The notes under the pieces are model-generated. The model ran no database searches and was not told where the DNA came from. It was given only the letters and a program-made list of their open reading frames with translations. DNA of 64,000 nucleotides, taken from the IMG/VR virus record IMGVR_UViG_3300020186_000013, positions 124,001 to 188,000 of that record; one strand, given 5' to 3'. Positions 596 to 57,894 of the stretch are shown piece after piece (the first letter of the stretch is position 1; each line of letters begins with the position of its first letter). A program made the position numbers and the translations under genes.

Positions 596-2104
596 TCAGA
601 TCACCTGATTCTGGACGATACCCAGTCTCGCTGTCAACATGAACTCGTCGTCGAACGCCGCGATGCGTTGCAACGCCGCGACCTTGTAAAGGGCGTACGC
701 CCTCGCGAGTTCTTCCGCCTCGTGCTTGTCCGAGGCGGACTTCTCGCTCCAGATTCCAGTTTCTAGAACTGGCATCCGGTAGGACCGGATCGAGGCGAGC
801 TGGCAGCGGTGGTCGACCGCCGCCTTCTCCAAGGACAGCCCGTCCCGGATTTGCAACACCCAGCGGCGAAGCTGGGCCGATGCGGTTTTGGTGGAGAGAG
901 CAAACGGATTGTTCGTCAGCCGCCGCTCCAAGGACCCGTCAGTAATCATTCGCCCGTAAACGCCACGCAACGCCGCCGCTGCGGGGGCCACGAACTCGGC
1001 CTTCTTGGTGAGCTTCGCGAATTCGCGGAGCGGCAGGATGACCTTCTCGACCGCGAGTGCAGCCAGGGCCTCGGCACACTTCTGCGTGCCGGGTTCGCCC
1101 AGCATCGCAGGATCGACTTTTCCTTGCAACCGGTCGTCGAAGGCGAGCTTGTAGATGTCGTGTACCTGGCGGCGGTCCATGGTCCGCTCCAAGTGGTCGA
1201 GCCCTGCGGCCAGCTTCACCTGTTGGTCAACGTCCGTGGGGTTCATCCGGGAGAAGTAGTCGTCGGCCATCATGACAGCCAGGGGAGCAGAAACGCCCAG
1301 GTCCTCGGCCACCTTGCTGCTGTACGCCCCGTAGGTGCCGTCCCAGCGATCGGACGCAGCCTTGGTGAGGTAGTCCGCCCGATTAGCGTACGCGATGCGG
1401 TCCGCCGGACGGAAGACGTTACTCATGTCGAACCACGTCGGGCGGGGGTTGTCGACGTGCAGCTGGTGGACGTCGTTGCCGACCTTCACCAGGCGGCTCA
1501 GGTTGTCCTTGCACCCGCCGGCCTTGCAGCTGGCTTCTTTGCAGTAGTCGTCGCGGGTCCTGGCCTGATTGCCGCACCACGAGCACGTGTCGTACGGGAC
1601 GCGGCACGCCATCGACACGGCGATGTCCTCGCCACGTGCCAGCTTCTCCATCTCCTTGTCGGCGACCAGCCCGCCGTTGCGTTCCGCCGCCGACTTCTCC
1701 TTGTTCAGGAACGCCAGCAACTCGACGCGACGCATGGTCTCGTTGTACGCGGACTTCTTGATGATCCCGTACGACGCCTGGGGGTCCTTGTTCTTGTGGT
1801 TCCGATACCACCGGGCGAACTTCTCGAACGTGTTGTGGTACTCGCGGCAGGTGGCCTCCTTGAAGCCGTCGCCGTTGCGGTTGGGGCCGTACGCCTCAGT
1901 CGCCCCGTGGGACAAGACGTGGACAGGCTCCTCGTCCTTCGCCGCCTTGATGTTGTCGATGACATCGAGAAAGGCGTGGGACGCCCGCTTGACGAAGTCC
2001 GAGCGGTCGTTGCCGATGAGGCCACGACTGCCGATCTTAATCATGGACACGACGGGACCGTCGAAGTCCCAACCGTGCGGGCTGATAATCTTAACCATTC
2101 CCAT
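596..2104 (-). CDS. Putative prohead (capsid maturation) protease
   Basis: 502 aa. Motifs GPNRNGDGF, YRNH and VSMACRVPYDTCSWCGN resemble large-phage head maturation proteases (by recall); C-terminal half is rich in K-x-A. Confidence 0.6.
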   Translation of the reverse strand: MGMVKIISPHGWDFDGPVVSMIKIGSRGLIGNDRSDFVKRASHAFLDVIDNIKAAKDEEPVHVLSHGATEAYGPNRNGDGFKEATCREYHNTFEKFARWYRNHKNKDPQASYGIIKKSAYNETMRRVELLAFLNKEKSAAERNGGLVADKEMEKLARGEDIAVSMACRVPYDTCSWCGNQARTRDDYCKEASCKAGGCKDNLSRLVKVGNDVHQLHVDNPRPTWFDMSNVFRPADRIAYANRADYLTKAASDRWDGTYGAYSSKVAEDLGVSAPLAVMMADDYFSRMNPTDVDQQVKLAAGLDHLERTMDRRQVHDIYKLAFDDRLQGKVDPAMLGEPGTQKCAEALAALAVEKVILPLREFAKLTKKAEFVAPAAAALRGVYGRMITDGSLERRLTNNPFALSTKTASAQLRRWVLQIRDGLSLEKAAVDHRCQLASIRSYRMPVLETGIWSEKSASDKHEAEELARAYALYKVAALQRIAAFDDEFMLTARLGIVQNQVI

Positions 2105-2115
2105 TGCCTGTCTCC

Positions 2116-3402
2116 TTACTTGCCGGCGGGCACGAGCGGCTTGAGACCGCCCTCGGCTCGCATCTTCTTGAACATCTCTGCCATGGTCTCGTGGCGGACC
2201 TTGTCCTCGGTGGCTCCGCGTCCGAGGTAGCCGGCGGCGTCCAGGGCCATGGGTAAGCCGTACCCGAACACCCGTGCCGGCGTCGACAGGCCCTTGTTCA
2301 TCACATTCTTTTCGCGAAGAGCCCTAAACCCGATTGTGTTGACGTGCCGTACATCGGCCTTCGACATGGTTGCCGGGAGGCCCGGTGCCGACTTGGCGTG
2401 GCTCTTGATCAGAGCGTCCAGTTTTTTCAACGTGCCGGCTGACGCTGGGCCACTGGTCTGCACTTTGTCGCGGAACGCTTTCACGGCGTCTGGAACACCA
2501 GGGGTTGGCGGGGGCGTGAAGTTGTGTACGACCTTATCACCGCTCAAACCGCCCTTGCTGAATAAGTCACGAATGCCGCCGAACCACCGCCCGCCGCCGA
2601 ACAGACCCTGGTTGGTGTTCTGAAGGAGCTTAGCCCGCTCAACGGCGGCGTCTGGTCCGCCCATGAGGTTCTTGATCATCGCTTGCCGCTCAGGCGTGGC
2701 GAACATGGGATGGTCTTTACCGATCTGTTCTAGCCCGGTCATAAACATACGCGGATCGCGGCCCATACCGCGAGCGTTCTGATACATGGTCTTGATATCG
2801 TGCAGGCCCAAGAGCCCGCCACCGTACAACGAGAACGGGGCATTTTCAGCCAGCGTACTCTTGACGCCCCTGACCACGTTCAGAGCCTTTTCCGGCACCG
2901 TCGGCTTACTTGCCGCCTCGATCTTGGCGACCATGTCCGGATGATCAGCGACGTACTTCGGATCGATCGAGAACTTCTTTCCGGTCGTCAGGTCGGTGAA
3001 GACGCCAGGACCGTCGGTCGGCACCTTCGGACCGCCGCCGCCCATGCTCGGCCAGTATTTCTGAGCCGCCCCGATGCCGCCACCCAAGGCACCGCCGGCC
3101 AGGGCACCGGTCAAGGCACTGCCGAGCATGCCCTTACGCTTGCTCTCGGGCGTGCCGTCCTGGTTGCCCATGTAGTGACTGGCCCCGCCGGCCAACGCTC
3201 CGACGCCCCCGCCGAGAAGGGCCTTGCCGACGATCGGGTCCTTGGCGACGTCCCCCACCGAGGTCATGATGTCGGACAAGCCGAGGGCCTTTTTCTCGGT
3301 CCACGTGTGGCCCTCGGTGCGTACCTTCGCCGCCCGCTCGGCGAGGTAATCGACCGCTTGCTTGAGGGTGCCGTCAACCAAGAAGTCCAGAGGGAGCGTC
3401 AT
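2116..3402 (-). CDS. Hypothetical Gly-rich virion-like protein
   Basis: 428 aa; glycine-zipper segments (ALLGGGVGALAGGA); EKKA motif near the N-terminus. Confidence 0.7.
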   Translation of the reverse strand: MTLPLDFLVDGTLKQAVDYLAERAAKVRTEGHTWTEKKALGLSDIMTSVGDVAKDPIVGKALLGGGVGALAGGASHYMGNQDGTPESKRKGMLGSALTGALAGGALGGGIGAAQKYWPSMGGGGPKVPTDGPGVFTDLTTGKKFSIDPKYVADHPDMVAKIEAASKPTVPEKALNVVRGVKSTLAENAPFSLYGGGLLGLHDIKTMYQNARGMGRDPRMFMTGLEQIGKDHPMFATPERQAMIKNLMGGPDAAVERAKLLQNTNQGLFGGGRWFGGIRDLFSKGGLSGDKVVHNFTPPPTPGVPDAVKAFRDKVQTSGPASAGTLKKLDALIKSHAKSAPGLPATMSKADVRHVNTIGFRALREKNVMNKGLSTPARVFGYGLPMALDAAGYLGRGATEDKVRHETMAEMFKKMRAEGGLKPLVPAGK

Positions 3403-6553: not shown

Positions 6554-9160
6554 TTAGTTACGGGCAGCTTCCTGCACACTCGGGTCGGACGGGTTGGCCA
6601 TGTTACCGAACTGGCCGTCCATACCGCCACCGACTTGCTTCTCCTTGAGGAAGAGGCAGACGTCGCCCATGACCTCGAAGGCGTTGCGGAGGGAGTCTTC
6701 GAGTTCCGGCAAGTCCTGCTTGCCGTAGCGGTCCTCGAACTCCTCTTGGTGCCAGTAGAACATGAACAGGATGCGGCCCAGCTTGTCCAGGGCCTTCATC
6801 AGATCGCCCAGGTAGCGATCGACCAGGCTGTCCTGGCGGACGGCTTTGAGCATCCCCGAGATCATTGCCGTGTCGAAGACCTCTTTCTGGCCCGCCGCCC
6901 CGGCCTCCTGGGCCGTCTGCATCGCCTGCTGGTCGGGCTGGTAGAACGGGTCGTAGATCGTCGGGTCCGTCTTGGCGGACATCAGTTCGGGGGCCTGATG
7001 GAACTCCTCCTGCGGGTAGATCGCGTTGACCTGTCCGTTGCCGACCCGCTCCATGCCTTGCTCGGCCGGCGGGAACGCGGGAGCCCCAGGACCACCCGAC
7101 AACGCAGACTGAGTCGGCCCGCCGAAGCCCTCGGCGTACTTGATGCGGTAGGTCGCGGACCCCTTCTTCTCGGCCTGCCGCATGATGGCACGGGCCGACG
7201 CCTCGTCGGTGCCGTGGTCACGGACCAGGCTGATGAACGCCGCCTTCTTGGTCATCCGGTGCTCGCGGCCATTCGCCTTGACGTACACGTCGCAGCCCCG
7301 GTCGAGGACGCGGATCGCCGCCGTCTTCTCGAACAACATGAGCTGCACGTCGTTGATGTTGCCGGGGTTGATCGGCCGCTCCTCGGTGCCGCTGCCGGGG
7401 TCGGACTCCGACATCGAACAACACGCGAGCAGGCCGTCCTCCTCACGCTTCTTCGGCTTGGGCGGGTCCTTGAGCTTGAAGACCTTGAAGTTCTTGGGCA
7501 CGTTCAGCTCGCCACCGACGGACCGCAGCCCGGACCCTTCACGCGGGTTGATGTGCAACAGGACGTCATACGTCGAGACGTACTCCTCGCCCGACAGCCA
7601 CCGGTTGTTACTGTGCGTCGGCGGCAGCCAGGTCGGGCGATCCTTGCCGTACGAACAGGCGTCCTTGAAGTCGACCCGGTAGGTGTCGTCGTCGACCTTC
7701 TTGCGGACGCGGAACGGCGTGGTGCCCGCCCCGTTCTCGCCAACGGCCAGGTAATGGCCCTCCTGCTCCAGCGTGTCCGAGTCCGATACGCCCTTCCACC
7801 ACTTCTGGAAGTCCGGGCGGTCGGGCTTGGCGTTGGGCTTCACCCACAGGTTGGAGGCGTGGATGTTCACCCAGTTCTTCGGGTCCGACAGGCGGATCAC
7901 GGTGGCCCACTGCTCCCGGCCTCGGTTGGTCTGGGGGTGCATGATGACCAGCATCTCGTCGAACGAGCCCGGCTTCTCTAGGACGTCGAAGACCCCGGTC
8001 TCTCCGGGGTTGGTGAGTTCCATGCGGACCTGGGTGTCGTACACCTGGCTGACGCCCTGGGAGTCCCGCTTGTCCTTGATGAGGACGGTGTCCTTGAGGA
8101 GCTTCTCCCGCTCGTCGGAGTCCAGCTCCTCCTTGTTCTGGGTGAAGCCGCCGGGGGCATCCATGTCGACCTTGTTCTCGGTCGCCCGCTTGCCCATGGC
8201 CCCCGCGAGGGCGTCGTAGACGATGATCTGGAGGGCACCGCTCTTGATCGGGTGCACGGCCGGCAGCGGGTCGGCGACGAGGGACCCGCCAACGCGGCGG
8301 TCGGCCGCGACCTTGGTTCGGACCGGGTCGACCTTCTTGATGAGTGACTTCGCGTCGGCCAACATGTCCTGGCCAAGTTTCAAGAAAAAGTCCCTGCCGT
8401 AGAACTTCTCGAAACCGGCTTTTAGGAGCGGGTGTCGCTGGGTCAACTCGAACGCCCCCTCGGCGAGCTTAATGTTCTCGCCCAAGAACCGCGTCAGAGT
8501 GAGCCGCTCGTCGAGGCCAGCGTGCTTCTGGAAGATCTTGTCGCTCTTGGTCGCGGCGGCACCAGCGAACGCCAAGAACGGGAGAGCCCACTCCTGGATG
8601 CGGGGCCGATAGTGGTCCGAGCCGTACTTCGACGACGTCGGCGGGTGCGACAGGCGATAGATGTCCGGCGGGACACCGCCGAGCTGGTAGGTGTCCTTGG
8701 GCGAAGCCTCGCCCAGGACGTGGGGCTTGCGGGAGATCAGGTAGTTGACCCAGTTCTCCTTCATCGGCACGAAGGCGTCCTGCTTCTTGACGTACAGAAG
8801 CTCGTGGCCTTTCAAGTCGCCGTTCAAAAAGAACACCGGGGCGTAGAGCCACTGGTCGCCGACCTTGAACCCGAAGACGCCCATGGCCTTCGTGTTGTCC
8901 TCGTTCCGGTCGACGAGCTGAAAGCCGATGATGTAGTCGATGAGCCGGGGACTCTTGTCCTTCAGGTAGGCGTAGGCGAGCGAGGAGAAGGCTTGCTCGA
9001 AGCCCGACTCCTGCTCGCCGCCGATGGACGCCTGCTTGATCTTGGTGCGGTCGAGGTCCCGGACGGCCTGACGCAGGGGCGTCTTGGCCGACTTGGACGC
9101 CCAGTACCAGCCCTGGTCCGTGGATCGCTTCTCGAATTTGGTCGTGGCGGTAATGCTCAT
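6554..9160 (-). CDS. Large hypothetical protein, probable virion structural protein
   Basis: About 868 aa from MSITAT (GGAG RBS); strong codon bias; K-x-A motifs (IKQAS, TKVAA, EKTAA, IKYAE). Confidence 0.8.
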   Translation of the reverse strand: MSITATTKFEKRSTDQGWYWASKSAKTPLRQAVRDLDRTKIKQASIGGEQESGFEQAFSSLAYAYLKDKSPRLIDYIIGFQLVDRNEDNTKAMGVFGFKVGDQWLYAPVFFLNGDLKGHELLYVKKQDAFVPMKENWVNYLISRKPHVLGEASPKDTYQLGGVPPDIYRLSHPPTSSKYGSDHYRPRIQEWALPFLAFAGAAATKSDKIFQKHAGLDERLTLTRFLGENIKLAEGAFELTQRHPLLKAGFEKFYGRDFFLKLGQDMLADAKSLIKKVDPVRTKVAADRRVGGSLVADPLPAVHPIKSGALQIIVYDALAGAMGKRATENKVDMDAPGGFTQNKEELDSDEREKLLKDTVLIKDKRDSQGVSQVYDTQVRMELTNPGETGVFDVLEKPGSFDEMLVIMHPQTNRGREQWATVIRLSDPKNWVNIHASNLWVKPNAKPDRPDFQKWWKGVSDSDTLEQEGHYLAVGENGAGTTPFRVRKKVDDDTYRVDFKDACSYGKDRPTWLPPTHSNNRWLSGEEYVSTYDVLLHINPREGSGLRSVGGELNVPKNFKVFKLKDPPKPKKREEDGLLACCSMSESDPGSGTEERPINPGNINDVQLMLFEKTAAIRVLDRGCDVYVKANGREHRMTKKAAFISLVRDHGTDEASARAIMRQAEKKGSATYRIKYAEGFGGPTQSALSGGPGAPAFPPAEQGMERVGNGQVNAIYPQEEFHQAPELMSAKTDPTIYDPFYQPDQQAMQTAQEAGAAGQKEVFDTAMISGMLKAVRQDSLVDRYLGDLMKALDKLGRILFMFYWHQEEFEDRYGKQDLPELEDSLRNAFEVMGDVCLFLKEKQVGGGMDGQFGNMANPSDPSVQEAARN

Positions 9161-10564: not shown

Positions 10565-13500
10565 TTACCGAAGCAAGCTCAGCCAGTCGGAGCCGCCCTT
10601 CTTCATAACCGCTGGAGTTCGGAACTTTGCAAGTTCCGGATAGCGGTCGAAGATGGCGTCCTTCTTCGGGTCGCCCGTCGAGCGAAAGTTGACCAAGTTA
10701 TTGCAGTCCGCCTGCTGGAGCTGGAACTTCGACGCAAGCTCGGAGAGCTCGTCCTGGAACTTGTCAAAGATCTTGGCCTCGTCCACGGACAGTTGAGGCT
10801 TGACGGGGGTGGCGGGTGCTGCGGGAGCGGCCTTCTGGATCGGCGGGATCGACGGGGAGACGGACTCGTCGCCCTGGTAGCCCGGACCGGTCAACGGGGT
10901 CGTACGCCGGTTCGGGTAGGTGAGGTCGATCGGCCGACGGGTGGACGCGGGCGGCATGCCGAGGTTCTGGTTGTATTGGTCCGCCACCTTGCGGTCCTGC
11001 TCGCGTTTCACCGCAGCGACCATCAGCGTCTTCGCGTAGTCGCCGTACATTGGCCCTTTAACCGGGTCGCGGCGGATGTTCGTAAGTTGGGTCGACGACA
11101 GTTTCGCCGGGTCTCCGTATTCCTTCAGAAATAGGGCCTGTTGGTCCGCCATCCGATTCGCCGAGGCAGCCTCCTCCTCCTTCACCTTGTGTTTTCGCTC
11201 GGTGGCCTCTTGCGAAAACTGGGCTTGGAACTTCTGGTCCAGTGTCTTGTGCCACTCGGGGTCGGTGACGTTCTGGGACCGGATCTCGGCGATGCGTTCT
11301 AGGGCTTTCTGCTTCAGCTCCGGCGGCGTGTCCGGATTATTAGCCCGCCGGTGCAGCAACGCATACTCGCTAGCGGCGTTGTTCTGCTCGTCTTGGGCGA
11401 TGTCGCGACGCTCTTGGATTATCGAGCCACCAGTGTGCCCGAGCAGCCGAGCCTGGTGGGCGGGGTTCAAGAAAAAGTTGGCGGCGTCACTGACAGGTGA
11501 CTCCGACTTGCCGGCGAACAGGTTAAACGCATCTTGCAGGGACTGCTCGTTGCGATTTCTCGTGCCCTCGTAATTGCCGCCGATTGCGTTCCCGATATCC
11601 TCGCCCACATCGTTACCCACCATCAGCGGTCGCACGAACTTGCCGAGGAACCCGGCCACGCCCATACGTCCCGGTGCTGCCGGGACACCGGGAGCCGGAT
11701 TGACCGCCTTAGTCCCGGCCAGGGCGTTGCCGATGCGAGAAAAGAGACTACCCTCGCTGCTGACGGTACGTAGGACACGACCGGTTGCCGCCGCAGTTAG
11801 CCCGCCTGCCGCCAGAGCCGCGGGAGCCGCCTTGGCCACGTCAGCCAAACCGATATTCGGCATCTGCGGCCCGCTGTCGGCTTGATTCTGCCCCGGCATG
11901 ACGCCGCCACCGGGGTGGTAGTATTCTTCCTGCCCGTCGCCGTCCTCGTCGCCGTCACCCGGAACACCGCCCATGCCTACCCCACGCCGGCCTGGGTACT
12001 TCGACTGCATGTTGTGGCCGTGGATCTGCCCGGTCAAGACACCCCAGGCGTTCTGATCGAGGCCGTGACCGATCGCCCCGATGCCGCCCTCTTCGATATG
12101 CTGCTGAGCCTGGGTAGGGTCCATGTGGTGTAGGTAGTTCTGGCCGCGTCGGAACCCGCCGTTGTACACGACCGGGTTCTGCTGCTGAGCCTTCTGCTGA
12201 ATGTTGGCGGTCGTCGCCGTGCCGACGCCACCGACGTAATCGTACGACGGCTTCGGGGCCGCAGGGGAGGCCCCAGTTGAGGCCCCAGTAGGAGCCCCAG
12301 TCGCCGCTGGTGGCGAGACCTGCGGTGCAGGCGGCGGTGCAGGCGGCGGTGCAGGCGTCGTCTTCGGGGCGGTCGACGCGATCGGTTTGGGGGCAGTGGC
12401 CGGGTCGTCGGCCTTCTTCAACCGAGACTTCTTGTCCTCCGACCACTTCATTAGGCTGGCCCAGTTCTTCTTGGGGGCCGGTGCCGGTGCGGGTGCCGCC
12501 GGGGGTTTCGCGGCCACGGGCACGCTCGGTCCCGACAGGTCGGGTTTGCTGGTCGGCTCGGGCTGCCGGACCATACCGACCCGGCCGAAGTCCACGGCCC
12601 GTGACAGACCCGGAACAAAGGACGTGCCCAGCTCGTTCGACGTGCCGCCGCGTTGGGCCGCTTCGAGCAGGCTGGCCTTCTGCCCCGACCCGTACATCTT
12701 GGTCATCCAGTCGGGGTCGTGGGCGACGTTCGCCATGCCCCGGATCATCTCGGCCTGGAACGGCGGCGGCTCGGCGTGGACGGTGACGTTGTCGACACCG
12801 AAGTGCTCGAACTCCTTCAGCATCGACGGCCGGACCTTGGTGCCGATCGTGTGGTGTAAGATCGGCCGTTCTAGGTACTTGCCCAGGGCCTTCTTCGGGT
12901 GAACGGACTCGTGCCCGTCGCGGGGCTCGTAAGTGTGCTCCAGCGTCGAGTACGGGACGACGTCGTCCTGTACATGGTCGCCGTGCTCCTCGGTAAGCCG
13001 GACGTGGTTGATGAGGCCGCGTGACAAGACCTCCAGGTTCCGCCGGTTGACCTTGAGCCCGGCCCCCCGCATGGCGTCACGCATGGCCCCCATGAAGTAC
13101 CGCCGGCCCTCACCGATGCCCTTGTGCTCGATCACGGTCGACGGATTCGGCCACCCGTCGGAGAGTATGTCACCAGCTTCGACCTGGTCTCCTGGTTTCA
13201 CCCTCGGGTCGTACCCACGACCGACATAGTGCTGTTGCCCGTCGATGGTGATGAACTTGCCGCCCGCCGGGGCGTCCTCAATCCGCTGGACGATGCCGTC
13301 GACGGTGGAGTGGGCTGCACCGCCCTTGAACGTCTTGGGGGCCTGGATGAGCTGGTTGACGGCCTCGAAGCCGCTCACGGACTTCTCCTGACCGGCGACG
13401 CCGCCGGAGTGCTTGGCACTCAGCTGGCCTTGCTGGAGTGGCTCGGACAGGGCCTGGGCGGCTTGGAGGCCGATCTGCTCGCCCCGCCCAGGGAGACCGC

Positions 13501-14437: not shown

Positions 14438-14455
14438 CTAGAAACCGGAATCTAG
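14438..14455. promoter_or_regulatory. 18-bp pseudo-palindrome CTAGAAACCGGAATCTAG (recurrent motif)
   Basis: Intergenic, 16 bp upstream of the beta'-C start; near-copies at 24329, 34896 and 57877, and inside genes. Confidence 0.55.
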
Positions 14456-24328: not shown

Positions 24329-24346
24329 CTAGAAACCAGAATCTAA
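24329..24346. promoter_or_regulatory. Pseudo-palindrome copy CTAGAAACCAGAATCTAA
   Basis: 16/18 identical to the 14438 copy; abuts the RBS of the 24319 gene. Confidence 0.5.
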
Positions 24347-34895: not shown

Positions 34896-34913
34896 TTAGA
34901 AACCAGCTTCTAG
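34896..34913. promoter_or_regulatory. Pseudo-palindrome copy TTAGAAACCAGCTTCTAG
   Basis: Lies between the 34922 stop and the 34866 start; 14/18 match to the 14438 copy. Confidence 0.45.
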
Positions 34914-35794: not shown

Positions 35795-36022
35795 TCATAC
35801 CTTCTGGTTTCGCACAGCCCACGCGGCGATGCCCGCCTTGGTGAGGCTCAGCTTCTTGCGGACGCGGGCGGCGTACGTGCGGACAGTTTCGTACCCAAGG
35901 TCCAGCTCGTCAGCGATGTGCTGGTAAGTCTTCCCTTCGGCGATCCCTCGCACCACGGCCAGCTCGCGATCCGACAGTTCCTTGTCGGAAGCCACATCGT
36001 TCTCCAATAGAGCTGCCATCAT
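35795..36022 (-). CDS. LuxR-family HTH transcriptional regulator (stand-alone)
   Basis: LSDRELAVVRGIAEGKTYQHIADELDLGYETVRTYAARVRKKL; ATGA-coupled. Confidence 0.85.
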   Translation of the reverse strand: MMAALLENDVASDKELSDRELAVVRGIAEGKTYQHIADELDLGYETVRTYAARVRKKLSLTKAGIAAWAVRNQKV

Positions 36023-42154: not shown

Positions 42155-42226
42155 TCGGGGTGGCAGGACTCGAACCTGCGACTTCATGGTTATGAGCCAT
42201 GCGAGCTGCCTCTGCTCTACACCCCA
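42155..42226 (-). tRNA. tRNA with a CAT anticodon (Met; initiator-like D stem; Ile2 not excluded)
   Basis: TGGGGTG/CACCCCG acceptor, GAGC/GCTC D stem, CATGG-CT-CAT-AA-CCATG, GCAGGTTCGAGTCCTGC. Confidence 0.9.
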
Positions 42227-42352
42227 ATAGTACGTCTGCTGCATCCAAGGACTACAGCAGACGCCCTGTGGCCACGCTGGCGATCCTTCGCCACCGCGAC
42301 AGCGGAGAATCTACCCAAGGCGGTAGACCCGCACAAGTCCAAAAGCCAGTTT

Positions 42353-42586
42353 CTACACCTTCATCGCGACCTTCTTCGCTTCCTTGATCATCGCGTCGAT
42401 GACGGTGTCTAGCCGCTTGTGCAAGTTGCACCGCAGACGCGGGTGGTCGATCACGGTCGGCGTCATCGACATCACCTGGGACGACTCGACGTCGGAGCAC
42501 TTCTCAGCCCGCCCGTCGAACGTGACCACGTACACCTCGCACTTGACTAGGACCGTTGCCATTTTGATTTCGTCGGCGTTGAGCAT
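42353..42586 (-). CDS. Small hypothetical protein
   Basis: Start MLNADE; 77 aa. Confidence 0.55.
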   Translation of the reverse strand: MLNADEIKMATVLVKCEVYVVTFDGRAEKCSDVESSQVMSMTPTVIDHPRLRCNLHKRLDTVIDAMIKEAKKVAMKV

Positions 42587-45427: not shown

Positions 45428-45797
45428 TGCTGCGTTCAACGTAGACGGCGAGGATGTCGTCCTCGCGGACGATGATGGTGTTCTCGCAGCCGGGGACTTC
45501 CACGCCCGCGTACCGGGTGTACAGGACGTGCTGGCCGGTCTTCACCGCGATCGGCTTGACCGTCCCATCGGCCAGCGTGCGGCCGGGGCCAATCACGAGG
45601 ACAGTGCCCATCGACGGCTTGTCCCGAGCCCGATCCGGCAGCAGGATGCCGCCGGGCGTCTTCGTGACGGCCTCATCGGTCAGGATAACCACGCGATCGT
45701 CCAGCGGGTCCACGAACGGTTCCTTCTTCTTGACCGGAGAGTCGGCCGTCTTGGGCGTCTTTTCCAACTCGTGTTTAAGATCGAACGTCTTGGCCAT
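45420..45797 (-). CDS. groES: Co-chaperonin GroES
   Basis: PLDDRVVI, KTPGGILLPD, GTVLVIGPG, YAGVEV, REDDILA. Confidence 0.92.
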   Translation of the reverse strand: MAKTFDLKHELEKTPKTADSPVKKKEPFVDPLDDRVVILTDEAVTKTPGGILLPDRARDKPSMGTVLVIGPGRTLADGTVKPIAVKTGQHVLYTRYAGVEVPGCENTIIVREDDILAVYVERSND

Positions 45798-47825: not shown

Positions 47826-48998
47826 TCACTCGGGAACAGGTGGCCTCGGCCGAGGGAACACGTCGTTCTTCTCATGCGGCATCGGGGCCACCTCCACTTG
47901 CCTGAACTCAGCCTTCTTACCGGGGATGAGTCCACGCTTAATGGCTTCTTCCTCGCTGATCCGTTCGAGGCCACGCTTCTTCAGCTCCTCGTCGGACAGC
48001 TTCTCCAGCTCCTTCGGGTCGAGGGAGTTGGCGAGCGGCATCCGCATTGCCTTCAGCATCCACTCCGCTTCACTCACCTTCTTGGTAGTGCCGTCGAGCA
48101 AGAATAGCAAGAACTGCCCGTCCCGCAAGGGCACGGCCAACCTCACCTGGTGGAGGTCCTGGGCCTTGTATACCACACCGCCGTCAGACGCCCGACGGAT
48201 ACATATCGGCTCGCCCGTGGGATCGAAGCCCGAAGCGTTCATGAACACGACCAGGGGGAAGTCGGTGTCCTTAATCAGGGCCTTGTACGGGGCAAGACGA
48301 TCGGGCTGCTGAGCGTTGTCCTCGGCCGTGATGTAGGCGGCGGCGAGACCGTCGGCCGGGACCTCGGTGCCGTTGACGTAGGTGTACCGCACCAGGCCGT
48401 GCCGCTGGTCGAAGTCGACCGTGATCTTAGGCTCCTCCTCGAATGGCTGCACCTTCCAGGTGGCCATCGACGTCTGGCCGGAGATCTTGTCGTACAGCGG
48501 GGAGCCGAGACGTTTGTCCCGGAAGAAGAACGCCAGCAGGATAATGACGGGCACGGACAACAACCACCGCAGCCAACGCGGCCACTTCTTGGGCTCGGGC
48601 AGGCCGAGTTCCTTGACCACTTCCTTCGCGGCCCCCGCGACCTCTTCGGGAGTCTTGGGGTTGTAATAGTTGGGCTTCTTCTTGTCGTCAGGCACGTCCG
48701 TGTCCTCCTCAAAGCTGGTTTCTACATCCCTGTACCGGCTCGCAAGCACCGAGACCACGCGGTCCGACCGGCCGAGGGCGATCACGACATCGTTGTACCC
48801 GAGAGCCCCCTGCACGGTCCCGATCTGGGCGTGGATCAGGTCCAGTTCAGCGTCCGACGGCGGCGGGTCGAGGAACGTCAACGCTGGACCGATCGACGGC
48901 CAGTCCTCGCGGCCCAACTCGAAAATGTCATACGGCAGACCGTTGACGACTACCGAATAGCAGGTGATGACGATACGCCCGGCGATGCTGTCGTGCAT
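47826..48998 (-). CDS. Hypothetical membrane protein
   Basis: 390 aa with an internal TM helix; an internal GTG start near 48696 is also possible. Confidence 0.6.
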   Translation of the reverse strand: MHDSIAGRIVITCYSVVVNGLPYDIFELGREDWPSIGPALTFLDPPPSDAELDLIHAQIGTVQGALGYNDVVIALGRSDRVVSVLASRYRDVETSFEEDTDVPDDKKKPNYYNPKTPEEVAGAAKEVVKELGLPEPKKWPRWLRWLLSVPVIILLAFFFRDKRLGSPLYDKISGQTSMATWKVQPFEEEPKITVDFDQRHGLVRYTYVNGTEVPADGLAAAYITAEDNAQQPDRLAPYKALIKDTDFPLVVFMNASGFDPTGEPICIRRASDGGVVYKAQDLHQVRLAVPLRDGQFLLFLLDGTTKKVSEAEWMLKAMRMPLANSLDPKELEKLSDEELKKRGLERISEEEAIKRGLIPGKKAEFRQVEVAPMPHEKNDVFPRPRPPVPE

Positions 48999-51157: not shown

Positions 51158-51486
51158 TGGTTCAGCTTGCCTTCTGGGCCGGGAGGCTTGTTGCAGTTTT
51201 CGAGTGCCGCCTTCAAAAAGTCGGCCGACGTCTTCTCGTTGTCGACGATGCGGAACTGCTTCTTCACCTCGCAGAAGAACGCTTCGGCACTGGCCGTGTC
51301 GGACGCACCCAGGTGCATCCACTTCGCCTGCCACACCTTCCAGTCCAGAAAGAACGTGTGGATGAGAGCATGGGCCTCGAATGACGCCAATGTGAACTGC
51401 TGGTCGTGGTCGGCGTGCTTCGCCTTCGGGGGCATGTCCTTACCGGCGACCGGCGGGTACAAAGCGTACGGGTTCGTCGAACTCAC
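51154..51486 (-). CDS. Hypothetical protein
   Basis: 110 aa; coupled on both sides. Confidence 0.6.
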   Translation of the reverse strand: MSSTNPYALYPPVAGKDMPPKAKHADHDQQFTLASFEAHALIHTFFLDWKVWQAKWMHLGASDTASAEAFFCEVKKQFRIVDNEKTSADFLKAALENCNKPPGPEGKLNQ

Positions 51487-52388
51487 GTCGACTCCTTCGC
51501 AAGGCGTGCGACGCGGTCCCGCAGGTACTCGACCGAGTCGTGGACGGTGAGGGTCTCCCAGCCCGGACAGCCAGGGCCGACGATCGCGGTCACCAGGAAC
51601 GGATCAGACGTCATGCAGGCTCGTAGCATGAGCCGCTGCCACGGCCGGTCGTGGCTATCGAGGACGAGCTTCAGCTTGTAGTCCGGCACGGCCAGTCGCT
51701 TCTCGGCAGCACGAGCTTCGATCGCGACCTGTCGCAGGCCCTTCTTGTGCAGCTCCTTCATCCGCTCGAACGACTGCTGTTGCCGATTGGCGGGCAGACC
51801 GACGCCGAACCAGTTCTGCCGCACCTCGCCGAAGTGCGTCACGCGGAAACCGAGATCGACCCAACGGGCCTTGGGCCACTTCTCCAGGAACTCCACGTCG
51901 TAGTTGCCGGCGTGGGAGTGCCACGTGTCGAACATCGGCCAGCACTGGCACGCCGGATCATTGGCGTTCCACATCTGGAAATACCCGTACGGCCACGGGT
52001 CGTGGTCGACAATCAGCTTGCCCTTCTCGTCATACCGGCGGGCACCGGCGATCGTGCCGGGCTTGAAGTTCTTCTCGGCGATCTTCCGCCAGTTGGTCTG
52101 AGGCATGATGTCGGAGTCGAAGTGCAGGACGTGGGCGTGGGGGTCCATCGCGGCGTAGGCGACGTTAAGGGCGGCACCCTTGTTGAATGCGGCACCGAAC
52201 TTGCCGAAGACGTCCGTGGTCACCACCCGGATTCGACGGTACTTATTGCACACGTCGATGACGGTCTTATCCTCGGGCTTGGTCACCACCGTTAGGCTGT
52301 CGAGGGTGTCCATCCAGATCGGGAGGGACTGCCGCAGGTAGTTGGCGTAGACGGGGCCGACGCAACACGTGAAGGCATCAATTTCCAT
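51483..52388 (-). CDS. Glycosyltransferase (GT-A fold)-like
   Basis: FNKGAALN, LHFDSDI, GYFQ, D.EF. Confidence 0.7.
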   Translation of the reverse strand: MEIDAFTCCVGPVYANYLRQSLPIWMDTLDSLTVVTKPEDKTVIDVCNKYRRIRVVTTDVFGKFGAAFNKGAALNVAYAAMDPHAHVLHFDSDIMPQTNWRKIAEKNFKPGTIAGARRYDEKGKLIVDHDPWPYGYFQMWNANDPACQCWPMFDTWHSHAGNYDVEFLEKWPKARWVDLGFRVTHFGEVRQNWFGVGLPANRQQQSFERMKELHKKGLRQVAIEARAAEKRLAVPDYKLKLVLDSHDRPWQRLMLRACMTSDPFLVTAIVGPGCPGWETLTVHDSVEYLRDRVARLAKEST

Positions 52389-53070
52389 TGGGCTTCCTGG
52401 CAACGCAGTACAAGAAGTTTTCGTGCTCGACGACCTTCTTCATAACGATCTTGACGTCCTCAAACCCCAACCGCGTCAGCACGTAGCGGAGGGAGTCGGC
52501 GGTGTAGAACCACAGGTGGTCGGGGTTCGTCAAGTCCGTATCGTCGGGCACGATAAGATACAGCGGACGGCCCGGTGCGAGCAACCGGTACATCTCTCGC
52601 AGGGCTCCCGGCGAGTCCGGCATATGCTCGGCGGCGTGAGCACACAGCACCAACTGGGCCTGCCCGGTGGCTGCCGCCTCCAACTCCTCGAAGCACCGGT
52701 TCTCCATGTGCACGTGGTGGTTGTCCCGCATCCACTGAGCCGCCCACGGGTCGGGCTCGAAGCCGACGTAGCTGTAGCCAAGCGACTTCAGGTGACTCAC
52801 GTACGGGCTAACCCCCGTGCCGATCTCAACGGCCATGCCGCCGCCCGGCGGGGCGGGCGGCAGCTTACCGAGGGCACCCGTCAACTCTTCAAGGTACTTG
52901 CCCGGACAGAACGTCCCGTTGACCAGCGAACCCAAGCTCTCGTAATACACCTGTCCCCCCGACGGGTGGTCCCGCCGGTACTGAACATGGTGGGCACACT
53001 TCTTCACCGACTTGGTCGCGTACCAAGTCGGGTCGGGAGTAGTGACGCAGCCGCAGGGGTGCTTGGTCAT
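52378..53070 (-). CDS. Class I SAM-dependent methyltransferase
   Basis: VEIGTG, GFEPD, HAAEHMPD, LLAPG. Confidence 0.8.
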   Translation of the reverse strand: MTKHPCGCVTTPDPTWYATKSVKKCAHHVQYRRDHPSGGQVYYESLGSLVNGTFCPGKYLEELTGALGKLPPAPPGGGMAVEIGTGVSPYVSHLKSLGYSYVGFEPDPWAAQWMRDNHHVHMENRCFEELEAAATGQAQLVLCAHAAEHMPDSPGALREMYRLLAPGRPLYLIVPDDTDLTNPDHLWFYTADSLRYVLTRLGFEDVKIVMKKVVEHENFLYCVARKPNGN

Positions 53071-54011
53071 TTGATTGCCGAGTTCTCGATGTAGTTCGTG
53101 ACCAACTTCAACGTCTTCGCGGCCGGTGCCGTGTCGAGGGTGATGAGTTCCACCCGGCGGTTCTTGTCCTTGGGCTTGTAGATGCCCGCGTGGGTCTGGC
53201 TGACCTCCTCGAACTCGCCGTCGCAGGCCAGTTGCCCGAACCGTCGCAGAGGAACACCGCACCGGTGACAGTGAAACTTCACCTGCTTGGCAAACGCCTC
53301 GATGCTGGAACGCCACCACCCCTCCACGATCGGCACGCCCAGGTCGGGCCACTCAGGGTCATCGGCGTGCAACATCGCCTGGGCACCCATGATCTCGCAC
53401 AGGTAACCCCGCAGGCCCCGGCCCGGCACGGCACAGATCATGGCCGACCAGTTCTGGTTGACGTCGCAGTTGGCGATCATCTCCCACCGCTTGCCCTCGT
53501 CGGGCTCGACGTCCATCATCGCCACGAACGGCGGCGAGTGCCGGGAGTCCGTGTCGTGGCCCTTGAGCTGCTTGCGACACTCCGGCCAGTCCCGGTAGAA
53601 CTCGTCGTACGCAACCTGGTCCATGTGGACGTTCAGGTTGCTGACCTCGGGGTTGAACGTGATGCGGGCAGCCTTGCCCTTCCCGAACAGCTTGTTGCAC
53701 CACAGCCCGCACTGCTCCTGGGGGATGTGCTTGCGGAGGATGGTGCACAGCTCCTCGAACTTCGGGTGCATCGCCGGGTTGCCGCCGAAGATGCCCACGA
53801 CCCCGAAGTAGTCCTTGAGGCTGACCACGGCCTGCTCGAACTCCTCGGTGGTGATGTAGACGTTCTTGCCGCCGAGGTTGCTCCCCTGCGTACAGCCGAA
53901 GCACTGCTTGTCGCAGGCACGGGTGATGTGGATCTGGAGGATGCCGTTACGCCAGCACTTCCGCTTCATGCTGGGCGTCACCATCTTCGCCAAGGCTTCC
54001 TGCTCGGTCAT
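53067..54011 (-). CDS. Radical SAM protein
   Basis: ITRACDKQCFGC (CxxxCxxC), FGGNPAMHP, additional C-terminal Cys residues. Confidence 0.85.
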   Translation of the reverse strand: MTEQEALAKMVTPSMKRKCWRNGILQIHITRACDKQCFGCTQGSNLGGKNVYITTEEFEQAVVSLKDYFGVVGIFGGNPAMHPKFEELCTILRKHIPQEQCGLWCNKLFGKGKAARITFNPEVSNLNVHMDQVAYDEFYRDWPECRKQLKGHDTDSRHSPPFVAMMDVEPDEGKRWEMIANCDVNQNWSAMICAVPGRGLRGYLCEIMGAQAMLHADDPEWPDLGVPIVEGWWRSSIEAFAKQVKFHCHRCGVPLRRFGQLACDGEFEEVSQTHAGIYKPKDKNRRVELITLDTAPAAKTLKLVTNYIENSAIK

Positions 54012-57085: not shown

Positions 57086-57865
57086 TTATAGGCCGGTCAC
57101 CCACTTCAGCCAGAACTTGCACTGGCTAAAGTGTAGGACGATCGTCTCGGGCTCGCGGGCGTGCCACTTAGCCACCTCCGTGTCGAGCCAGGTGTGCATG
57201 TCGGTGGAGGCCGGGTCGTCCGTCCCGACGATCCGGTTCCACCCCGGACGGTCAAGGACGCGGTGGCCGTAGTCCCGCTTCCGCAGTGCCCAGATCAACG
57301 CCCCTTCGTCCTGCCACGTCACCAGCTGCCTCGCCCGGCCGACCGTGCCCTCGTGGCACATCCGCGTCCACTGCATGAGGAGGTCGGCGTCACGATCAGG
57401 GTCGAGACCAACCACGCCGTTGTTGGGCGGGTAGGGGATCTCGTGCAGGACGGGGAACAGCTCGTACAGTGAGGGGTCATTAGGTAGCGGGTAGGCCGTG
57501 TCGTACGTGTGACGCACCGCAAACGACCCGTTAGCCGCCAATTCATCCAGGATCGCGTCTAAGGGCCTCAAAATGACGCAATCGGCATCCAGCCACAAAC
57601 ACTGGTCGAGGCCGCTGTAGGCCATCCAGACGGGCTTGTTCCAGATCTGCCACAATTCATGCCCCACAGGAACCGCCAGGAGGCAGTCGTGGGGCTTGGG
57701 CTTCACGGTCACGCCACGGCGTCGCAGCCACTCTCCCTGGGTATCCGTCAGGCCGAGGTCGGTTACAACGACCGAGGTTGCAGGCGAGTTACCCGCAAGG
57801 GAGGTGACCAGGCACTGGAGCGGCCGGAAGTATTCCGAGTCGGCCGCTGTCACGACACCACGCAT
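57086..57865 (-). CDS. Glycosyltransferase (GT8-like, DxD)
   Basis: VTAADSEY, DLGL, WNKP, LWLDAD, NNGV, DEGAL, LHF. Confidence 0.7.
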   Translation of the reverse strand: MRGVVTAADSEYFRPLQCLVTSLAGNSPATSVVVTDLGLTDTQGEWLRRRGVTVKPKPHDCLLAVPVGHELWQIWNKPVWMAYSGLDQCLWLDADCVILRPLDAILDELAANGSFAVRHTYDTAYPLPNDPSLYELFPVLHEIPYPPNNGVVGLDPDRDADLLMQWTRMCHEGTVGRARQLVTWQDEGALIWALRKRDYGHRVLDRPGWNRIVGTDDPASTDMHTWLDTEVAKWHAREPETIVLHFSQCKFWLKWVTGL

Positions 57866-57876
57866 GGGTACTCACT

Positions 57877-57894
57877 CCTAAAACCGGAATCTAG
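57877..57894. promoter_or_regulatory. Pseudo-palindrome copy CCTAAAACCGGAATCTAG
   Basis: Spans the upstream stop codon and the RBS of the 57865 gene; 14-nt exact match AAACCGGAATCTAG to the 14438 copy. Confidence 0.5.

What the first reader, a model, noticed from the sequence alone, without database searches (positions are those of the whole stretch)
749..57894. Dispersed 18-bp pseudo-palindrome (best copy CTAGAAACCGGAATCTAG) in both intergenic and coding positions
Seen at gene junctions: 14438 CTAGAAACCGGAATCTAG, 24329 CTAGAAACCAGAATCTAA, 34896 TTAGAAACCAGCTTCTAG, 57877 CCTAAAACCGGAATCTAG, and ~42339-42356 (reverse, GTAGAAACTGGCTTTTGG). Seen in genes: 749-766 (reverse, CTAGAAACTGGAATCTGG), 8408 CTCGAAACCGGCTTTTAG, and ~48708-48725 (reverse, GTAGAAACCAGCTTTGAG). 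The motif is AT-rich, contains otherwise rare CTAG/TAG, and uses rare codons where coding. Inference: dyad symmetry, both orientations and spacing of several kb suggest a dimeric protein site (operator, parS/matS-like organiser or packaging signal) or a phage-RNAP promoter element.
Basis: partly seen in the sequence, partly recalled or inferred. Interest (0 to 1): 0.6.

Follow-up and report, generated by a model that had tools for sequence, protein, structure and literature searches.

The report
Evenly spaced palindromes across phage genome
An 18-bp near-palindrome recurs about every 8.6 kb along a 208-kb uncultured jumbo phage genome, and related phages carry their own versions at matching places, which points to an array of docking sites for one dimeric DNA-binding protein rather than to promoters.

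Summary
All eight listed copies exist, and the window lies in a 208,145-bp virus record with about 25 copies (consensus YTAGAAAC-YR-GWWTCTAR).

Of the 25 copies, 18 are intergenic, although only 7% of the genome is intergenic. Nine of them supply the stop codon of the upstream gene. The other 7 lie in genes, some built from rare synonymous codons on a conserved peptide.

Eight related 180-235 kb phages each carry a lineage-specific 16-24 bp palindrome. I tested spacing in five of them and it is even in all five. Positions are partly syntenic, including the same codons of orthologous genes.

The asymmetric sites occur in both orientations although genes run almost all one way. Some sites sit just before terminators, at a convergent junction, or deep inside genes. 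RNA folding is weak. These points argue against a promoter, a terminator or an RNA element.

My best explanation is a genome-wide array of binding sites for a phage-encoded dimeric protein. The best candidate is a conserved 325-aa protein with a ParB/Noc-like DNA-binding fold, a coiled coil and a basic tail. It is encoded outside the window. Binding and function are inferred, not shown.

The parts
749..766 (-). Motif copy inside the 502-aa gene (596-2104, minus strand), 155 nt before its stop codon. Encodes VLETGIW.
   Evidence: The orthologue in relative G002 carries that phage's own motif version at the same codons (VLKTGFW).
8408..8425 (+). Motif copy inside the 868-aa gene (6554-9160, minus strand), about 1.85 kb from the gene's end.
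   Evidence: It is built from rare codons (CTA, AAA, GGT) on the conserved peptide PLLKAGFE, where G001 uses GC-ending codons and has no site.
14438..14455 (+). Best copy. Intergenic, 16 nt upstream of the start of the 1285-aa RNAP beta-prime C-terminal-like gene (10565-14422, minus strand).
   Evidence: A site sits at the same junction in L029, L030/G001, L031 and G002.
24329..24346 (+). Intergenic copy, 10 nt upstream of the 130-aa gene (23927-24319, minus strand). Its end overlaps the Shine-Dalgarno sequence.
   Evidence: The same junction carries a site in L029, G001 and G002, and in G005 with that phage's unrelated motif sequence.
34896..34913 (+). Intergenic copy, 9 nt after the upstream stop codon. 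A GC hairpin follows, then the start of the 596-aa gene (33076-34866, minus strand).
   Evidence: The same junction carries a site in G001 and G002.
42339..42356 (-). Intergenic copy whose TAG is the stop codon of the upstream gene. It lies about 110 nt upstream of tRNA-Met and tRNA-Arg (42077-42226, minus strand).
48708..48725 (-). Degenerate copy inside the 390-aa gene (47826-48998, minus strand), about 0.9 kb from the gene's end.
57877..57894 (+). Intergenic copy. Its TAG is the stop codon of gene 57891-58646, and its other end overlaps the Shine-Dalgarno sequence of gene 57086-57865 (both minus strand).
35795..36022 (-). 75-aa GerE/LuxR-type HTH protein. Rival candidate binder.
   Evidence: Pfam PF00196, 1.6e-11. 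Present in G000, G001, G002 and G004. Not found above cut-off in G005, G021, G007, G015 or G003, all of which have arrays.

Best explanation
The motif is one member of a genome-wide, evenly spaced array of about 25 binding sites for a single phage-encoded, sequence-specific, dimeric DNA-binding protein. Each site is a 7-2-7 inverted repeat with a central YR step. The array acts on double-stranded DNA and serves the genome as a whole. It provides docking or nucleation points every 7-9 kb from which the protein organises, coats or insulates the 208-kb chromosome. This is how Noc-NBS, KorB-OB or MatP-matS arrays work. It does not switch individual genes. The most likely binder is a conserved 325-aa protein (G000 8059-9036, minus strand, outside the window). 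It has an N-terminal ParB/Noc-like helical DNA-binding domain, a long coiled coil that dimerises, and a lysine-rich tail. Site sequence and protein recognition helix have diverged together among related phages. Shown: the array, its even spacing, its conservation, and selection on it at nucleotide level. Inferred: that a protein binds it, which protein, and what binding achieves.
For: (1) Non-random array.
(2) Even spacing: in G000 the mean gap is 8.6 kb with CV 0.28 (curated list) or 0.42 (objective list), against 0.95 under random placement, P<5e-5. The same holds in relatives: G002 CV 0.33, G005 0.41, G001 0.45, G007 0.53, G004 0.61, with P from <5e-5 to 0.02. GC-rich chance palindrome families in the same genomes have CV of about 1.
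(3) Nucleotide-level selection: in-gene copies sit at the same codons of orthologous genes, each in its own genome's motif version. One copy is made purely by rare synonymous codons on a conserved peptide.
(4) Lineage-specific versions sharing the outline of an AT-rich dyad of about 7-2-7 were found in 8 of 9 relatives examined whole. G001, G002, G003 and G004 have A-tract types. G005, G007, G015 and G021 have unrelated half-sites. About ten G000 sites lie at junctions or codons orthologous to G002 sites.
(5) Action on double-stranded DNA: the G000 site is asymmetric (one half TAGAAAC, the other TAGAWKC), yet it lies 16:9 in the two orientations although 228 of 236 genes run one way. G015 shows the same. 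In G002 the site is a perfect palindrome.
(6) Candidate binder: a core gene found in 12 of 13 relatives that are at least 90% complete. Sub-threshold PF17762 (HTH_ParB) hits fall in this gene in four genomes. Best PDB sequence hit is Spo0J, E=0.012. In the AF2 model (pLDDT 70.6), 18 of the 20 best-ranked listed Foldseek matches are ParB/Noc/Spo0J/SopB DNA-binding domains, probability 0.98-1.00 except the two SopB rows (0.33-0.38), E 4e-3 to 0.8. Homodimer model ipSAE 0.73, best control 0.00; this mark was reached by 21 of 30 solved homodimers and 0 of 23 monomers; partner pLDDT 81; runs share at least 96% of contacts. A site lies directly upstream of this gene in G001, G002 and G004. The recognition-helix class LYxL[KR]N[FV] goes with A-tract sites. 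That rule predicted such sites in G003, and they were then found.
Against: There is no binding experiment and no transcript data for this uncultured phage. The fold match is weak by E-value, and the Pfam hits are below the curated cut-off. The ParB CTPase N-domain is absent from G000 and G002, so ParB-like sliding cannot be assumed. The match between helix class and site type is confounded by phylogeny. In G000 itself no site adjoins the candidate gene. No array was found in G010 with my palindrome search. The tenfold preference for gene junctions, and the closeness of many sites to start codons (3-40 nt), would also suit an expression signal. Sites are mildly enriched near terminators: 20% against 12% of junctions. 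What binding achieves (compaction, protection, silencing, replication) is not constrained by the data.
Confidence: 0.5

Rival explanations
1. Stoperator-like insulators. The same kind of protein-bound DNA sites, but their job is to block elongating RNA polymerase at gene ends. This would silence or punctuate the one-way transcription of the genome, as the mycobacteriophage L5 repressor does at about 30 stoperators.
For: 14 of 18 intergenic G000 sites lie within 9 nt of the upstream stop codon, and 9 contain it. Distance to the next start varies from 3 to 272 nt. Sites are about twice as often near intrinsic terminators as random junctions. One conserved site sits at a convergent junction in G002. 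Even spacing would cap read-through length. Stoperators are described as dispersed, mostly intergenic repressor sites in PMC4351075.
Against: Stoperators are asymmetric and lie in one orientation relative to transcription (PMC4351075). These sites are dyads in both orientations. Seven G000 sites lie inside genes, where a block would truncate the mRNA. No repressor or integrase was identified, although I did not search for them systematically.
Confidence: 0.2
2. Promoter of the phage's own multisubunit RNA polymerase. It would be conserved within a genome and diverge between lineages, as T7-type promoters do.
For: The phage encodes beta and split beta-prime homologues. In the distant relative Arash these are virion proteins (PMC10585845). 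The motif is AT-rich in a 62.5% GC genome. About 10 of 18 intergenic copies lie 3-30 nt upstream of a start codon, and some of those genes lack a Shine-Dalgarno sequence. The copy number is operon-like.
Against: The site is palindromic in G002, and its asymmetric form shows no orientation preference in G000 or G015, although genes run one way. At genome positions 11293, 71680 and 198521 an intrinsic terminator follows within about 10 nt. The G002 site at 130152 lies between two converging gene ends. In-gene sites lie 0.9-1.9 kb from the next start. Separate -10-like TAnnnT elements fill many intergenic regions (direct reading), and a sigma-70 region-2 homologue is encoded. Even spacing is not expected of promoters.
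Confidence: 0.12
3. Operators of the 75-aa GerE/LuxR protein (window 35795-36022), forming a regulon of about 25 sites. NarL/GerE-type dimers are known to bind 16-bp 7-2-7 inverted repeats that begin with TA (my own knowledge).
For: GerE domain at 1.6e-11. Orthologues exist in G000, G001, G002 and G004, the four genomes with closely similar A-tract sites. The gene lies 0.9 kb upstream of a conserved site.
Against: No GerE above cut-off was found in the 100%-complete G005 (26 sites) and G021 (about 29 sites), nor in G007, G015 or G003. The arrays therefore exist without it. Most sites are not next to promoter-like elements.
Confidence: 0.1
4. RNA-level element: a hairpin in the transcript that acts as a processing site, terminator or protein-binding operator. 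One version would be a target of the phage's CsrA homologue.
For: In G002 and G005 the extended palindrome would fold into a 9-10 bp hairpin (direct reading). A CsrA homologue is conserved. The sites lie at gene ends.
Against: The eight window copies fold weakly, -0.4 to -4.9 kcal/mol with non-significant z-scores, apart from one at -9.3, and they adopt different structures. The two orientations give different RNAs. Half-site variants do not co-vary to keep pairing. G002 sites have no GGA for CsrA. Strict sequence identity among copies is not needed for a hairpin.
Confidence: 0.05
5. Selfish or mobile repeat of the REP/MITE kind that has spread through intergenic DNA.
For: It is a genome-specific imperfect palindrome that lies right after stop codons in both orientations, as REPs do (my own knowledge).
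Against: No Y1/RAYT transposase was found in five genomes. Even spacing, orthologous positions across phages with 57% beta-subunit identity, and in-frame copies shaped by synonymous codons indicate selection on position, not spread.
Confidence: 0.03

Closest known systems
17-bp dyad repeats of Cluster O mycobacteriophages (TGTTCGG-N3-CCGAACA; Cresawn et al. 2015, PMC4351075)
   Same: More than 30 copies of a short inverted repeat occur throughout a phage genome, many in short intergenic spaces and about a third in genes. They show no meaningful orientation and are not tied to promoters. The authors predicted that a dimeric DNA-binding protein binds them in a process other than transcription initiation. 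Their function is unknown.
   Different: Those repeats are denser towards one genome end, not evenly spaced. They occur in 70-kb siphoviruses of one tight cluster. No lineage-specific site turnover and no candidate binder were reported. The phages are unrelated.
Noc-NBS, ParB-parS and KorB-OB arrays (ParB-family HTH dimers on 13-16 bp palindromes)
   Same: The sites are palindromes with a central CG-type step, dispersed in tens of copies (NBS about 70; OB 12 on a 60-kb plasmid; my own knowledge). The candidate binder's fold matches the ParB/Noc DNA-binding domains. Specificity shifts between paralogues in that family. The site is often next to the gene.
   Different: No ParB N-terminal CTPase domain is present. 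Instead there is a coiled coil and a basic tail. The half-site polarity differs from parS. The arrays are evenly spaced along a lytic-type phage genome. No ParA partner was sought.
Stoperators of mycobacteriophage L5 and Cluster A
   Same: About 30 sites for one protein are dispersed over a phage genome, in short intergenic gaps that overlap stop codons. They act on the whole genome rather than on single promoters (PMC4351075; my own knowledge of Brown et al. 1997).
   Different: Stoperators are asymmetric, 13-14 bp, and all oriented with transcription. The immunity repressor of a temperate phage binds them.
MatP-matS and RacA-ram chromosome-organising arrays
   Same: A few dozen palindromic sites are bound by a dimer that bridges or anchors DNA. 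RacA has a DNA-binding domain followed by a long coiled coil, like the candidate here (my own knowledge).
   Different: Those arrays are confined to one chromosomal macrodomain of a bacterium and are not evenly spaced. The protein folds are unrelated (MatP is RHH, RacA is MerR-like).
Baculovirus homologous regions (hr) bound by IE-1
   Same: Imperfect palindromes are dispersed around a large viral genome and bound by a viral dimer. They act at a distance, as enhancers and origins (my own knowledge).
   Different: The hrs are clusters of 30-bp repeats at 8-9 loci in a eukaryotic virus. The proteins are unrelated.
T7-type phage-RNAP promoters
   Same: The sequences are highly conserved within a genome, lineage-specific, mostly intergenic, and present in tens of copies.
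   Different: Those promoters are asymmetric and all point with the genes they serve. They are not evenly spaced and do not lie inside genes far from starts.

Membership tests
ParB-parS / Noc-NBS / KorB-OB type site array | Palindromic site of about 16 bp, present in several to many copies | tested here: met
   7-2-7 dyad, about 25 copies in G000 and 33 perfect palindromes in G002.
ParB-parS / Noc-NBS / KorB-OB type site array | Cognate protein with a ParB-family HTH DNA-binding domain | tested here: inconclusive
   PF17762 hits are below cut-off. Spo0J sequence hit at E=0.012. ParB/Noc/Spo0J/SopB DNA-binding domains take 18 of the 20 best-ranked listed Foldseek matches, at E 4e-3 to 0.8. Binding was not tested.
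ParB-parS / Noc-NBS / KorB-OB type site array | N-terminal ParB/Srx CTPase domain that makes the protein a sliding clamp | tested here: not met
   PF02195 is absent from G000 and G002. The N-terminus of the model is all-helical.
ParB-parS / Noc-NBS / KorB-OB type site array | ParA-type partner ATPase (for partition systems) | not tested
   No search was made.
L5-type stoperators | Dispersed over the genome in short intergenic gaps, often overlapping stop codons | tested here: met
   18 of 25 are intergenic and 9 contain the upstream stop codon.
L5-type stoperators | Asymmetric site in one orientation relative to transcription | tested here: not met
   The site is a dyad. The asymmetric form lies 16:9 in the two orientations.
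L5-type stoperators | Bound by the immunity repressor of a temperate phage | not testable with these tools
   No repressor was identified, and the lifestyle is unknown.
Phage-RNAP promoter (T7-like, AR9/phiKZ-like) | All copies oriented with the downstream gene | tested here: not met
Phage-RNAP promoter (T7-like, AR9/phiKZ-like) | Lies upstream of a transcription unit, with nothing that would stop the transcript at once | tested here: not met
   Terminators follow directly after three sites. One site is at a convergent junction. Some in-gene sites lie far from any start.
Phage-RNAP promoter (T7-like, AR9/phiKZ-like) | Transcripts start at a fixed distance from the element | not testable with these tools
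   No RNA runs hold this phage.
Intrinsic terminator or RNA hairpin element | Stable stem-loop in the transcript, with pairing kept by covariation | tested here: not met
   -0.4 to -4.9 kcal/mol for 7 of 8 copies, z-scores not significant. Half-site variants do not compensate.
REP/RAYT repeats | Cognate Y1 (RAYT) transposase in the genome | tested here: not met
   PF01797 is absent from five genomes.
NarL/GerE 7-2-7 operator | A GerE-type HTH protein co-occurs with the sites | tested here: not met
   Present in G000, G001, G002 and G004. Absent above cut-off from G005 and G021 (both 100% complete, with arrays), and from G007, G015 and G003.
Cluster O-type dispersed dyad repeats | Tens of copies of one short inverted repeat throughout a phage genome, both intergenic and coding, not tied to promoters | tested here: met
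   compared with PMC4351075. This is a descriptive class of unknown mechanism.

The most novel reading that the evidence does not exclude
A large clade of uncultured 180-235 kb phages with their own multisubunit RNA polymerase divides its chromosome into units of roughly 7-9 kb (up to about 16 kb in relatives where only the best copies were counted), using an evenly spaced 'ruler' of lineage-specific palindromes. A previously undescribed ParB-fold, coiled-coil, basic-tail protein reads these palindromes. This would be a phage chromatin or insulation system in which site and reader co-evolve, and in which spacing itself is under selection strong enough to write sites into coding sequence.
Probability: 0.3. 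Interest if true: 0.85.

Novelty: new variant of a known kind. Interest (0 to 1): 0.72.

Why it matters
Dispersed dyad repeats have been noted in a few phages without explanation (Cluster O). Here the same kind of element shows three properties that make it tractable and more surprising.

- The spacing is even in all six genomes tested.
- The site sequence turns over in concert between lineages, while many positions stay put.
- Selection on the sites is visible at synonymous codons.

Together these properties show that distance between sites matters, not just their presence. That points to a process acting along the whole DNA molecule, such as looping, coating, insulation, or loading of something that travels a limited distance. 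No such process is described for tailed phages.

The finding also supplies a concrete, testable protein-DNA pair in each of at least nine genomes. It gives a natural specificity series for a ParB-like DNA-binding fold. Lastly, it offers a cheap sequence signature (word over-representation plus a low gap CV) for finding similar systems elsewhere.

Tried and rejected
- **Close relatives.** Megablast of 20 kb against named phages found nothing. The nearest named phages, Salmonella phage Arash and some Vibrio phages, share only about 32% identity in the beta subunit. The Arash paper reports no promoters or motifs.
- **Exact 16-mer scan of IMG/VR.** It returned the same phage at 99.9% identity on three contigs, plus chance hits in AT-rich contigs.
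- **Pattern-based locus searches.** The single-protein search failed for the beta subunit. The alignment-based search with the ParB-fold protein re-found only known genomes.
- **RNA evidence.** The one run search found only DNA contigs from microbial-mat metagenomes and no RNA. I therefore did not use read laying, and no transcript starts could be mapped.
- **ParB CTPase domain.** Absent from G000 and G002.
- **Type IIA topoisomerase.** I looked for one because the sites might be gyrase- or topoisomerase-type sites. It is absent from five genomes.
- **RAYT transposase.** Absent.
- **Link to terminators.** Weak: 20% of sites against 12% of junctions lie within 120 nt of a strict terminator.
- **CsrA as reader.** Rejected. 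G002 sites lack GGA, and the sites lie in both orientations.
- **162-aa protein at window 35305-35793.** It gave only a sub-threshold HTH_ParB hit (E 0.002). I did not pursue it.
- **ORF at 32667.** It has no Pfam match.
- **Site directly upstream of the ParB-fold gene.** This holds in G001, G002 and G004, but not in G000, G003, G005 or the more distant relatives.
- **G010.** My palindrome-family search found no array there. The method misses odd-centred or strongly asymmetric sites.
- **AR9 late promoter.** I recalled a resemblance to AACA-N6-TA from memory. I did not test it, and I dropped it because of the orientation data.

Full report
**Where the window lies.** The window is bases 124001-188000 of a 208,145-bp IMG/VR virus record, G000 (62.5% GC, estimated 93% complete). 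I called genes with a home-made caller based on codon usage and GC3. It gives 236 genes, 228 of them on the minus strand, covering 93% of the DNA. The phage encodes a multisubunit RNA polymerase: a beta-like gene at window 18656-21772 and split beta-prime-like genes at 16507-18255 and 10565-14422. It also encodes a class II ribonucleotide reductase, DNA polymerase, primase, helicase, an SbcC-like protein and a terminase. No named phage is close. The best are Salmonella phage Arash and some Vibrio phages, at about 32% identity in the beta subunit. Hundreds of metagenomic relatives with 50-88% identity exist, many on contigs of 180-235 kb. DNA of this phage occurs in several microbial-mat metagenomes. 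No RNA run holds it.

In the window the best copy has 4 matches at up to 3 mismatches, against 0.03 expected. Genome-wide a degenerate 15-mer gives 18 matches at up to 1 mismatch, against 0 for the reversed control. About 25 sites can be listed. The core 10-mer is the most over-represented word of the genome, 13 observed against 0.09 expected. The site is a 7-2-7 inverted repeat with a central YR step. In G000 one half is always TAGAAAC. The other half deviates at one or two positions (TAGAWKC). No perfect palindrome occurs.

**Position relative to genes.** Eighteen of 25 sites are intergenic, although only 7.0% of the genome is intergenic. Fourteen of these 18 lie within 9 nt of the upstream stop codon, and nine contain it. 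The distance to the next start codon ranges from 3 to 272 nt. Often the motif is essentially the whole spacer between two genes. Seven sites lie inside genes, 155 to 1855 nt from the gene's end.

**Even spacing.** Gaps in G000 average 8.6 kb with CV 0.28 on my curated list. On the purely rule-based list, which includes one weak extra match, CV is 0.42. Random placement gives 0.95, whether anywhere in the genome or only at gene junctions. P is below 5e-5. The in-gene copies fall where the even series needs a site.

**Conservation in relatives.** I examined nine related genomes whole. In eight of them one AT-rich palindrome of 16-24 bp is the outstanding repeated word, or one of them, and it is dispersed over the genome. 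The versions are listed below, with spacing CV where I tested it.
- G002: 33 perfect copies of AAAACCGGTTTT inside a 22-24 bp palindrome, CV 0.33.
- G001: TAAAAGC-CA-GTTTTGA, CV 0.45.
- G004: TAAAAAA-CG-TTTTTTA, CV 0.61.
- G003: a related asymmetric A-tract version, at least 9 copies.
- G005: CTAATAG-CG-CTATTAG, 26 copies, CV 0.41.
- G007: GTCTTAA-CG-TTAAGAC, 23 copies, CV 0.53.
- G021: AWAGATATCTWT, about 29 copies, CV 0.70.
- G015: CGGTAAT-TA-AGCACCG, 19 copies, asymmetric, both orientations, CV 0.61.

Chance families of GC-rich palindromes in the same genomes have CV of about 1. No array was found in G010. Each of these eight relatives therefore has an array but its own sequence, and spacing is even in all five tested.

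**Synteny of sites.** About ten G000 sites lie at the same gene junction as a site in G002, which shares 57% beta-subunit identity. Several also match G001. A few match G005, even though the G005 motif is unrelated in sequence. Other sites are shifted by one or two genes.

**Selection at nucleotide level.** In the 502-aa gene (window 596-2104), G000 encodes VLETGIW and G002 encodes VLKTGFW at the same codons. Each spells its own genome's motif. The same holds in the 267-aa gene. In the 868-aa gene (window 6554-9160) the peptide PLLKAGFE is conserved. G000 spells it with rare AT-ending codons that create the motif, whereas G001 uses GC-ending codons and has no site. This shows selection on the DNA word itself, at defined places.

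**What the sites are not.**
- *Not promoters.* The asymmetric G000 site lies 16:9 in its two orientations although nearly all genes run one way. G015 behaves alike, and G002 uses a perfect palindrome. Three G000 sites are followed within about 10 nt by a classical GC hairpin plus T-run. The G002 site at 130152 lies between two converging gene ends. In-gene sites can be 0.9-1.9 kb from the next start. Many intergenic regions carry separate -10-like TAnnnT elements (direct reading). A sigma-70 region-2 homologue is also encoded.
- *Not intrinsic terminators or RNA hairpins.* Seven of the eight window copies fold at only -0.4 to -4.9 kcal/mol with non-significant z-scores. The variants do not compensate each other.
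- *Only weakly tied to terminators.* 20% of sites lie near one, against 12% of junctions.
- *Not REP-like mobile repeats.* No RAYT transposase was found, and positions are conserved.
- *No phage type IIA topoisomerase* was found that might use them.

**Who might read them.**
It is real, and NarL/GerE dimers do bind 7-2-7 repeats (my own knowledge). However, it is missing from complete relatives that have arrays: G005 and G021, and also G007, G015 and G003.
- *325-aa core protein.* This better candidate is encoded at G000 8059-9036 (minus strand), outside the window. It has no Pfam or PHROG family at standard thresholds. Sub-threshold HTH_ParB hits fall in this gene in four genomes. The best PDB sequence hit of its profile is B. 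subtilis Spo0J, E=0.012.
- *Its structure model.* The AlphaFold2 model has mean pLDDT 70.6. It shows a helical domain at residues 10-157, a conserved Gly/Arg/Pro linker, a long coiled coil at 176-278, and a disordered lysine-rich tail. Eighteen of the 20 best-ranked listed Foldseek matches are ParB, Noc, Spo0J or SopB DNA-binding domains. Probability is 0.98-1.00 for all but the two SopB rows (0.33-0.38), with E-values of only 4e-3 to 0.8.
- *Dimerisation.* A homodimer model scores ipSAE 0.73 against 0.00 for the best control. That mark was reached by 21 of 30 solved homodimers and 0 of 23 monomers. Partner pLDDT is 81, and runs share at least 96% of contacts. This supports dimerisation but does not show it.
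- *Distribution and neighbourhood.* The gene is present in 12 of 13 further relatives that are at least 90% complete. A site lies directly upstream of it in G001, G002 and G004, but not in G000.
- *Recognition helix.* The putative helix reads LYxL[KR]N[FV] in the genomes with A-tract sites, and differs in G005, G007, G015 and G021, whose sites differ. From this rule I expected an A-tract site in G003, where none had been found. A directed scan then found at least nine. Shared ancestry confounds this correlation, so it is suggestive only.
- *Missing domain.* The ParB CTPase domain is absent. ParB-like sliding must therefore not be assumed.

**Most likely mechanism.** A dimer of a phage protein, probably the ParB-fold protein, binds each dyad on double-stranded DNA. 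Because the sites are kept 7-9 kb apart over the whole molecule, even at the cost of writing them into genes, the array most likely serves a process that acts along the DNA over a limited range. Candidates are nucleation of a coat, bridging into loops through the coiled coil and basic tail, or insulation of the one-way transcription.
- Shown: the array, its spacing, its conservation, and selection on it.
- Inferred: protein binding, from dyad symmetry, orientation-independence and concerted lineage-specific change.
- More weakly inferred: the identity of the binder.
- Open: the physiological role.

The stoperator-like reading, a block to elongating polymerase at gene ends, is the strongest rival for the role. 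It fits the tight link to stop codons but not the in-gene sites or the symmetry.

**Comparison with known systems.** The closest described phenomenon is the set of more than 30 copies of a 17-bp dyad repeat in Cluster O mycobacteriophages. Its function is unknown and its authors reached the same general inference. Those repeats are not evenly spaced, however, and no reader protein or lineage series is known (PMC4351075). In working principle the nearest systems are Noc-NBS, KorB-OB, MatP-matS and L5 stoperators. Membership in each fails on at least one defining feature: no CTPase domain, symmetric rather than oriented sites, or a different protein fold. I therefore rate this a new variant of a known kind. 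The even spacing and the co-evolving site series are the new elements.

**Limits.**
- Gene calls are my own and approximate. For example, a small ORF may follow the site at G000 55980.
- Site lists for relatives come from simple consensus or seed rules, so degenerate copies are missed. This inflates some gaps and CVs.
- All relatives are metagenomic contigs without hosts.
- I made no use of read laying, because only assembled DNA contigs were on offer.

Noticed in passing
G000 genome 52261-52876 (outside the window; locus L150:12261-12876): A 616-nt gene-free stretch holds about nine copies of TCGAACTTAG(G), in both orientations. Single copies of the same word flank the motif sites at genome 63190 and 71680. 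It looks like an iteron, origin or promoter cluster.
   Followed up: no
window 30589-30783 (+): A 64-aa CsrA homologue (Pfam 2.2e-24) is encoded on the minority strand. It is conserved in G001, G002 and G005. A phage-borne global translational regulator is unusual.
   Followed up: partly
window 42077-42226 (-): tRNA-Arg(tct) and tRNA-Met(cat) genes lie about 110 nt downstream of the motif copy at 42339-42356.
   Followed up: partly
G000 intergenic regions, e.g. genome 119400-119531, 117276-117670, 165024-165195 (window 41024-41195): The word TTTACCCAT (or near variants) recurs right after terminator T-runs and 10-20 nt before start codons. It may be a second expression signal.
   Followed up: no
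G000 genome 2152-4269 (-), locus L148: A ThyX thymidylate synthase gene is interrupted by an intein-like Hint plus LAGLIDADG insert. Inteins are also frequent in the beta-subunit genes of relatives (Pfam columns).
   Followed up: no
G000 genome 60426-60626 (-): A sigma-70 region-2 match (5.6e-8) has one in-frame TAA. G002 has an intact counterpart. The phage may carry its own sigma factor, possibly broken or mis-assembled here.
   Followed up: no
window 45420-45797 (-), 36019-36906 (-), 30780-31331 (-), 28997-30517 (-): These genes encode a GroES/Cpn10 homologue, a family-2 glycosyltransferase, a 2H phosphoesterase, and a polynucleotide-kinase/phosphatase-like protein. The last two suggest an RNA-repair module.
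   Followed up: no
window 35305-35793 (-): A 162-aa protein next to the GerE gene gives a sub-threshold HTH_ParB hit (E 0.002). It is conserved in G001 and G002.
   Followed up: partly
G003 51440-53230 (loci L182:11440-13230): An array of about 25 tandem copies with a 60-bp period dominates the word statistics of that relative.
   Followed up: no
whole genomes G000, G001, G002, G005: Gene orientation is extremely one-sided over about 200 kb: 228/236, 260/263, 239/249 and 308/315 genes on one strand. G002 and two other relatives have direct terminal repeats.
   Followed up: partly
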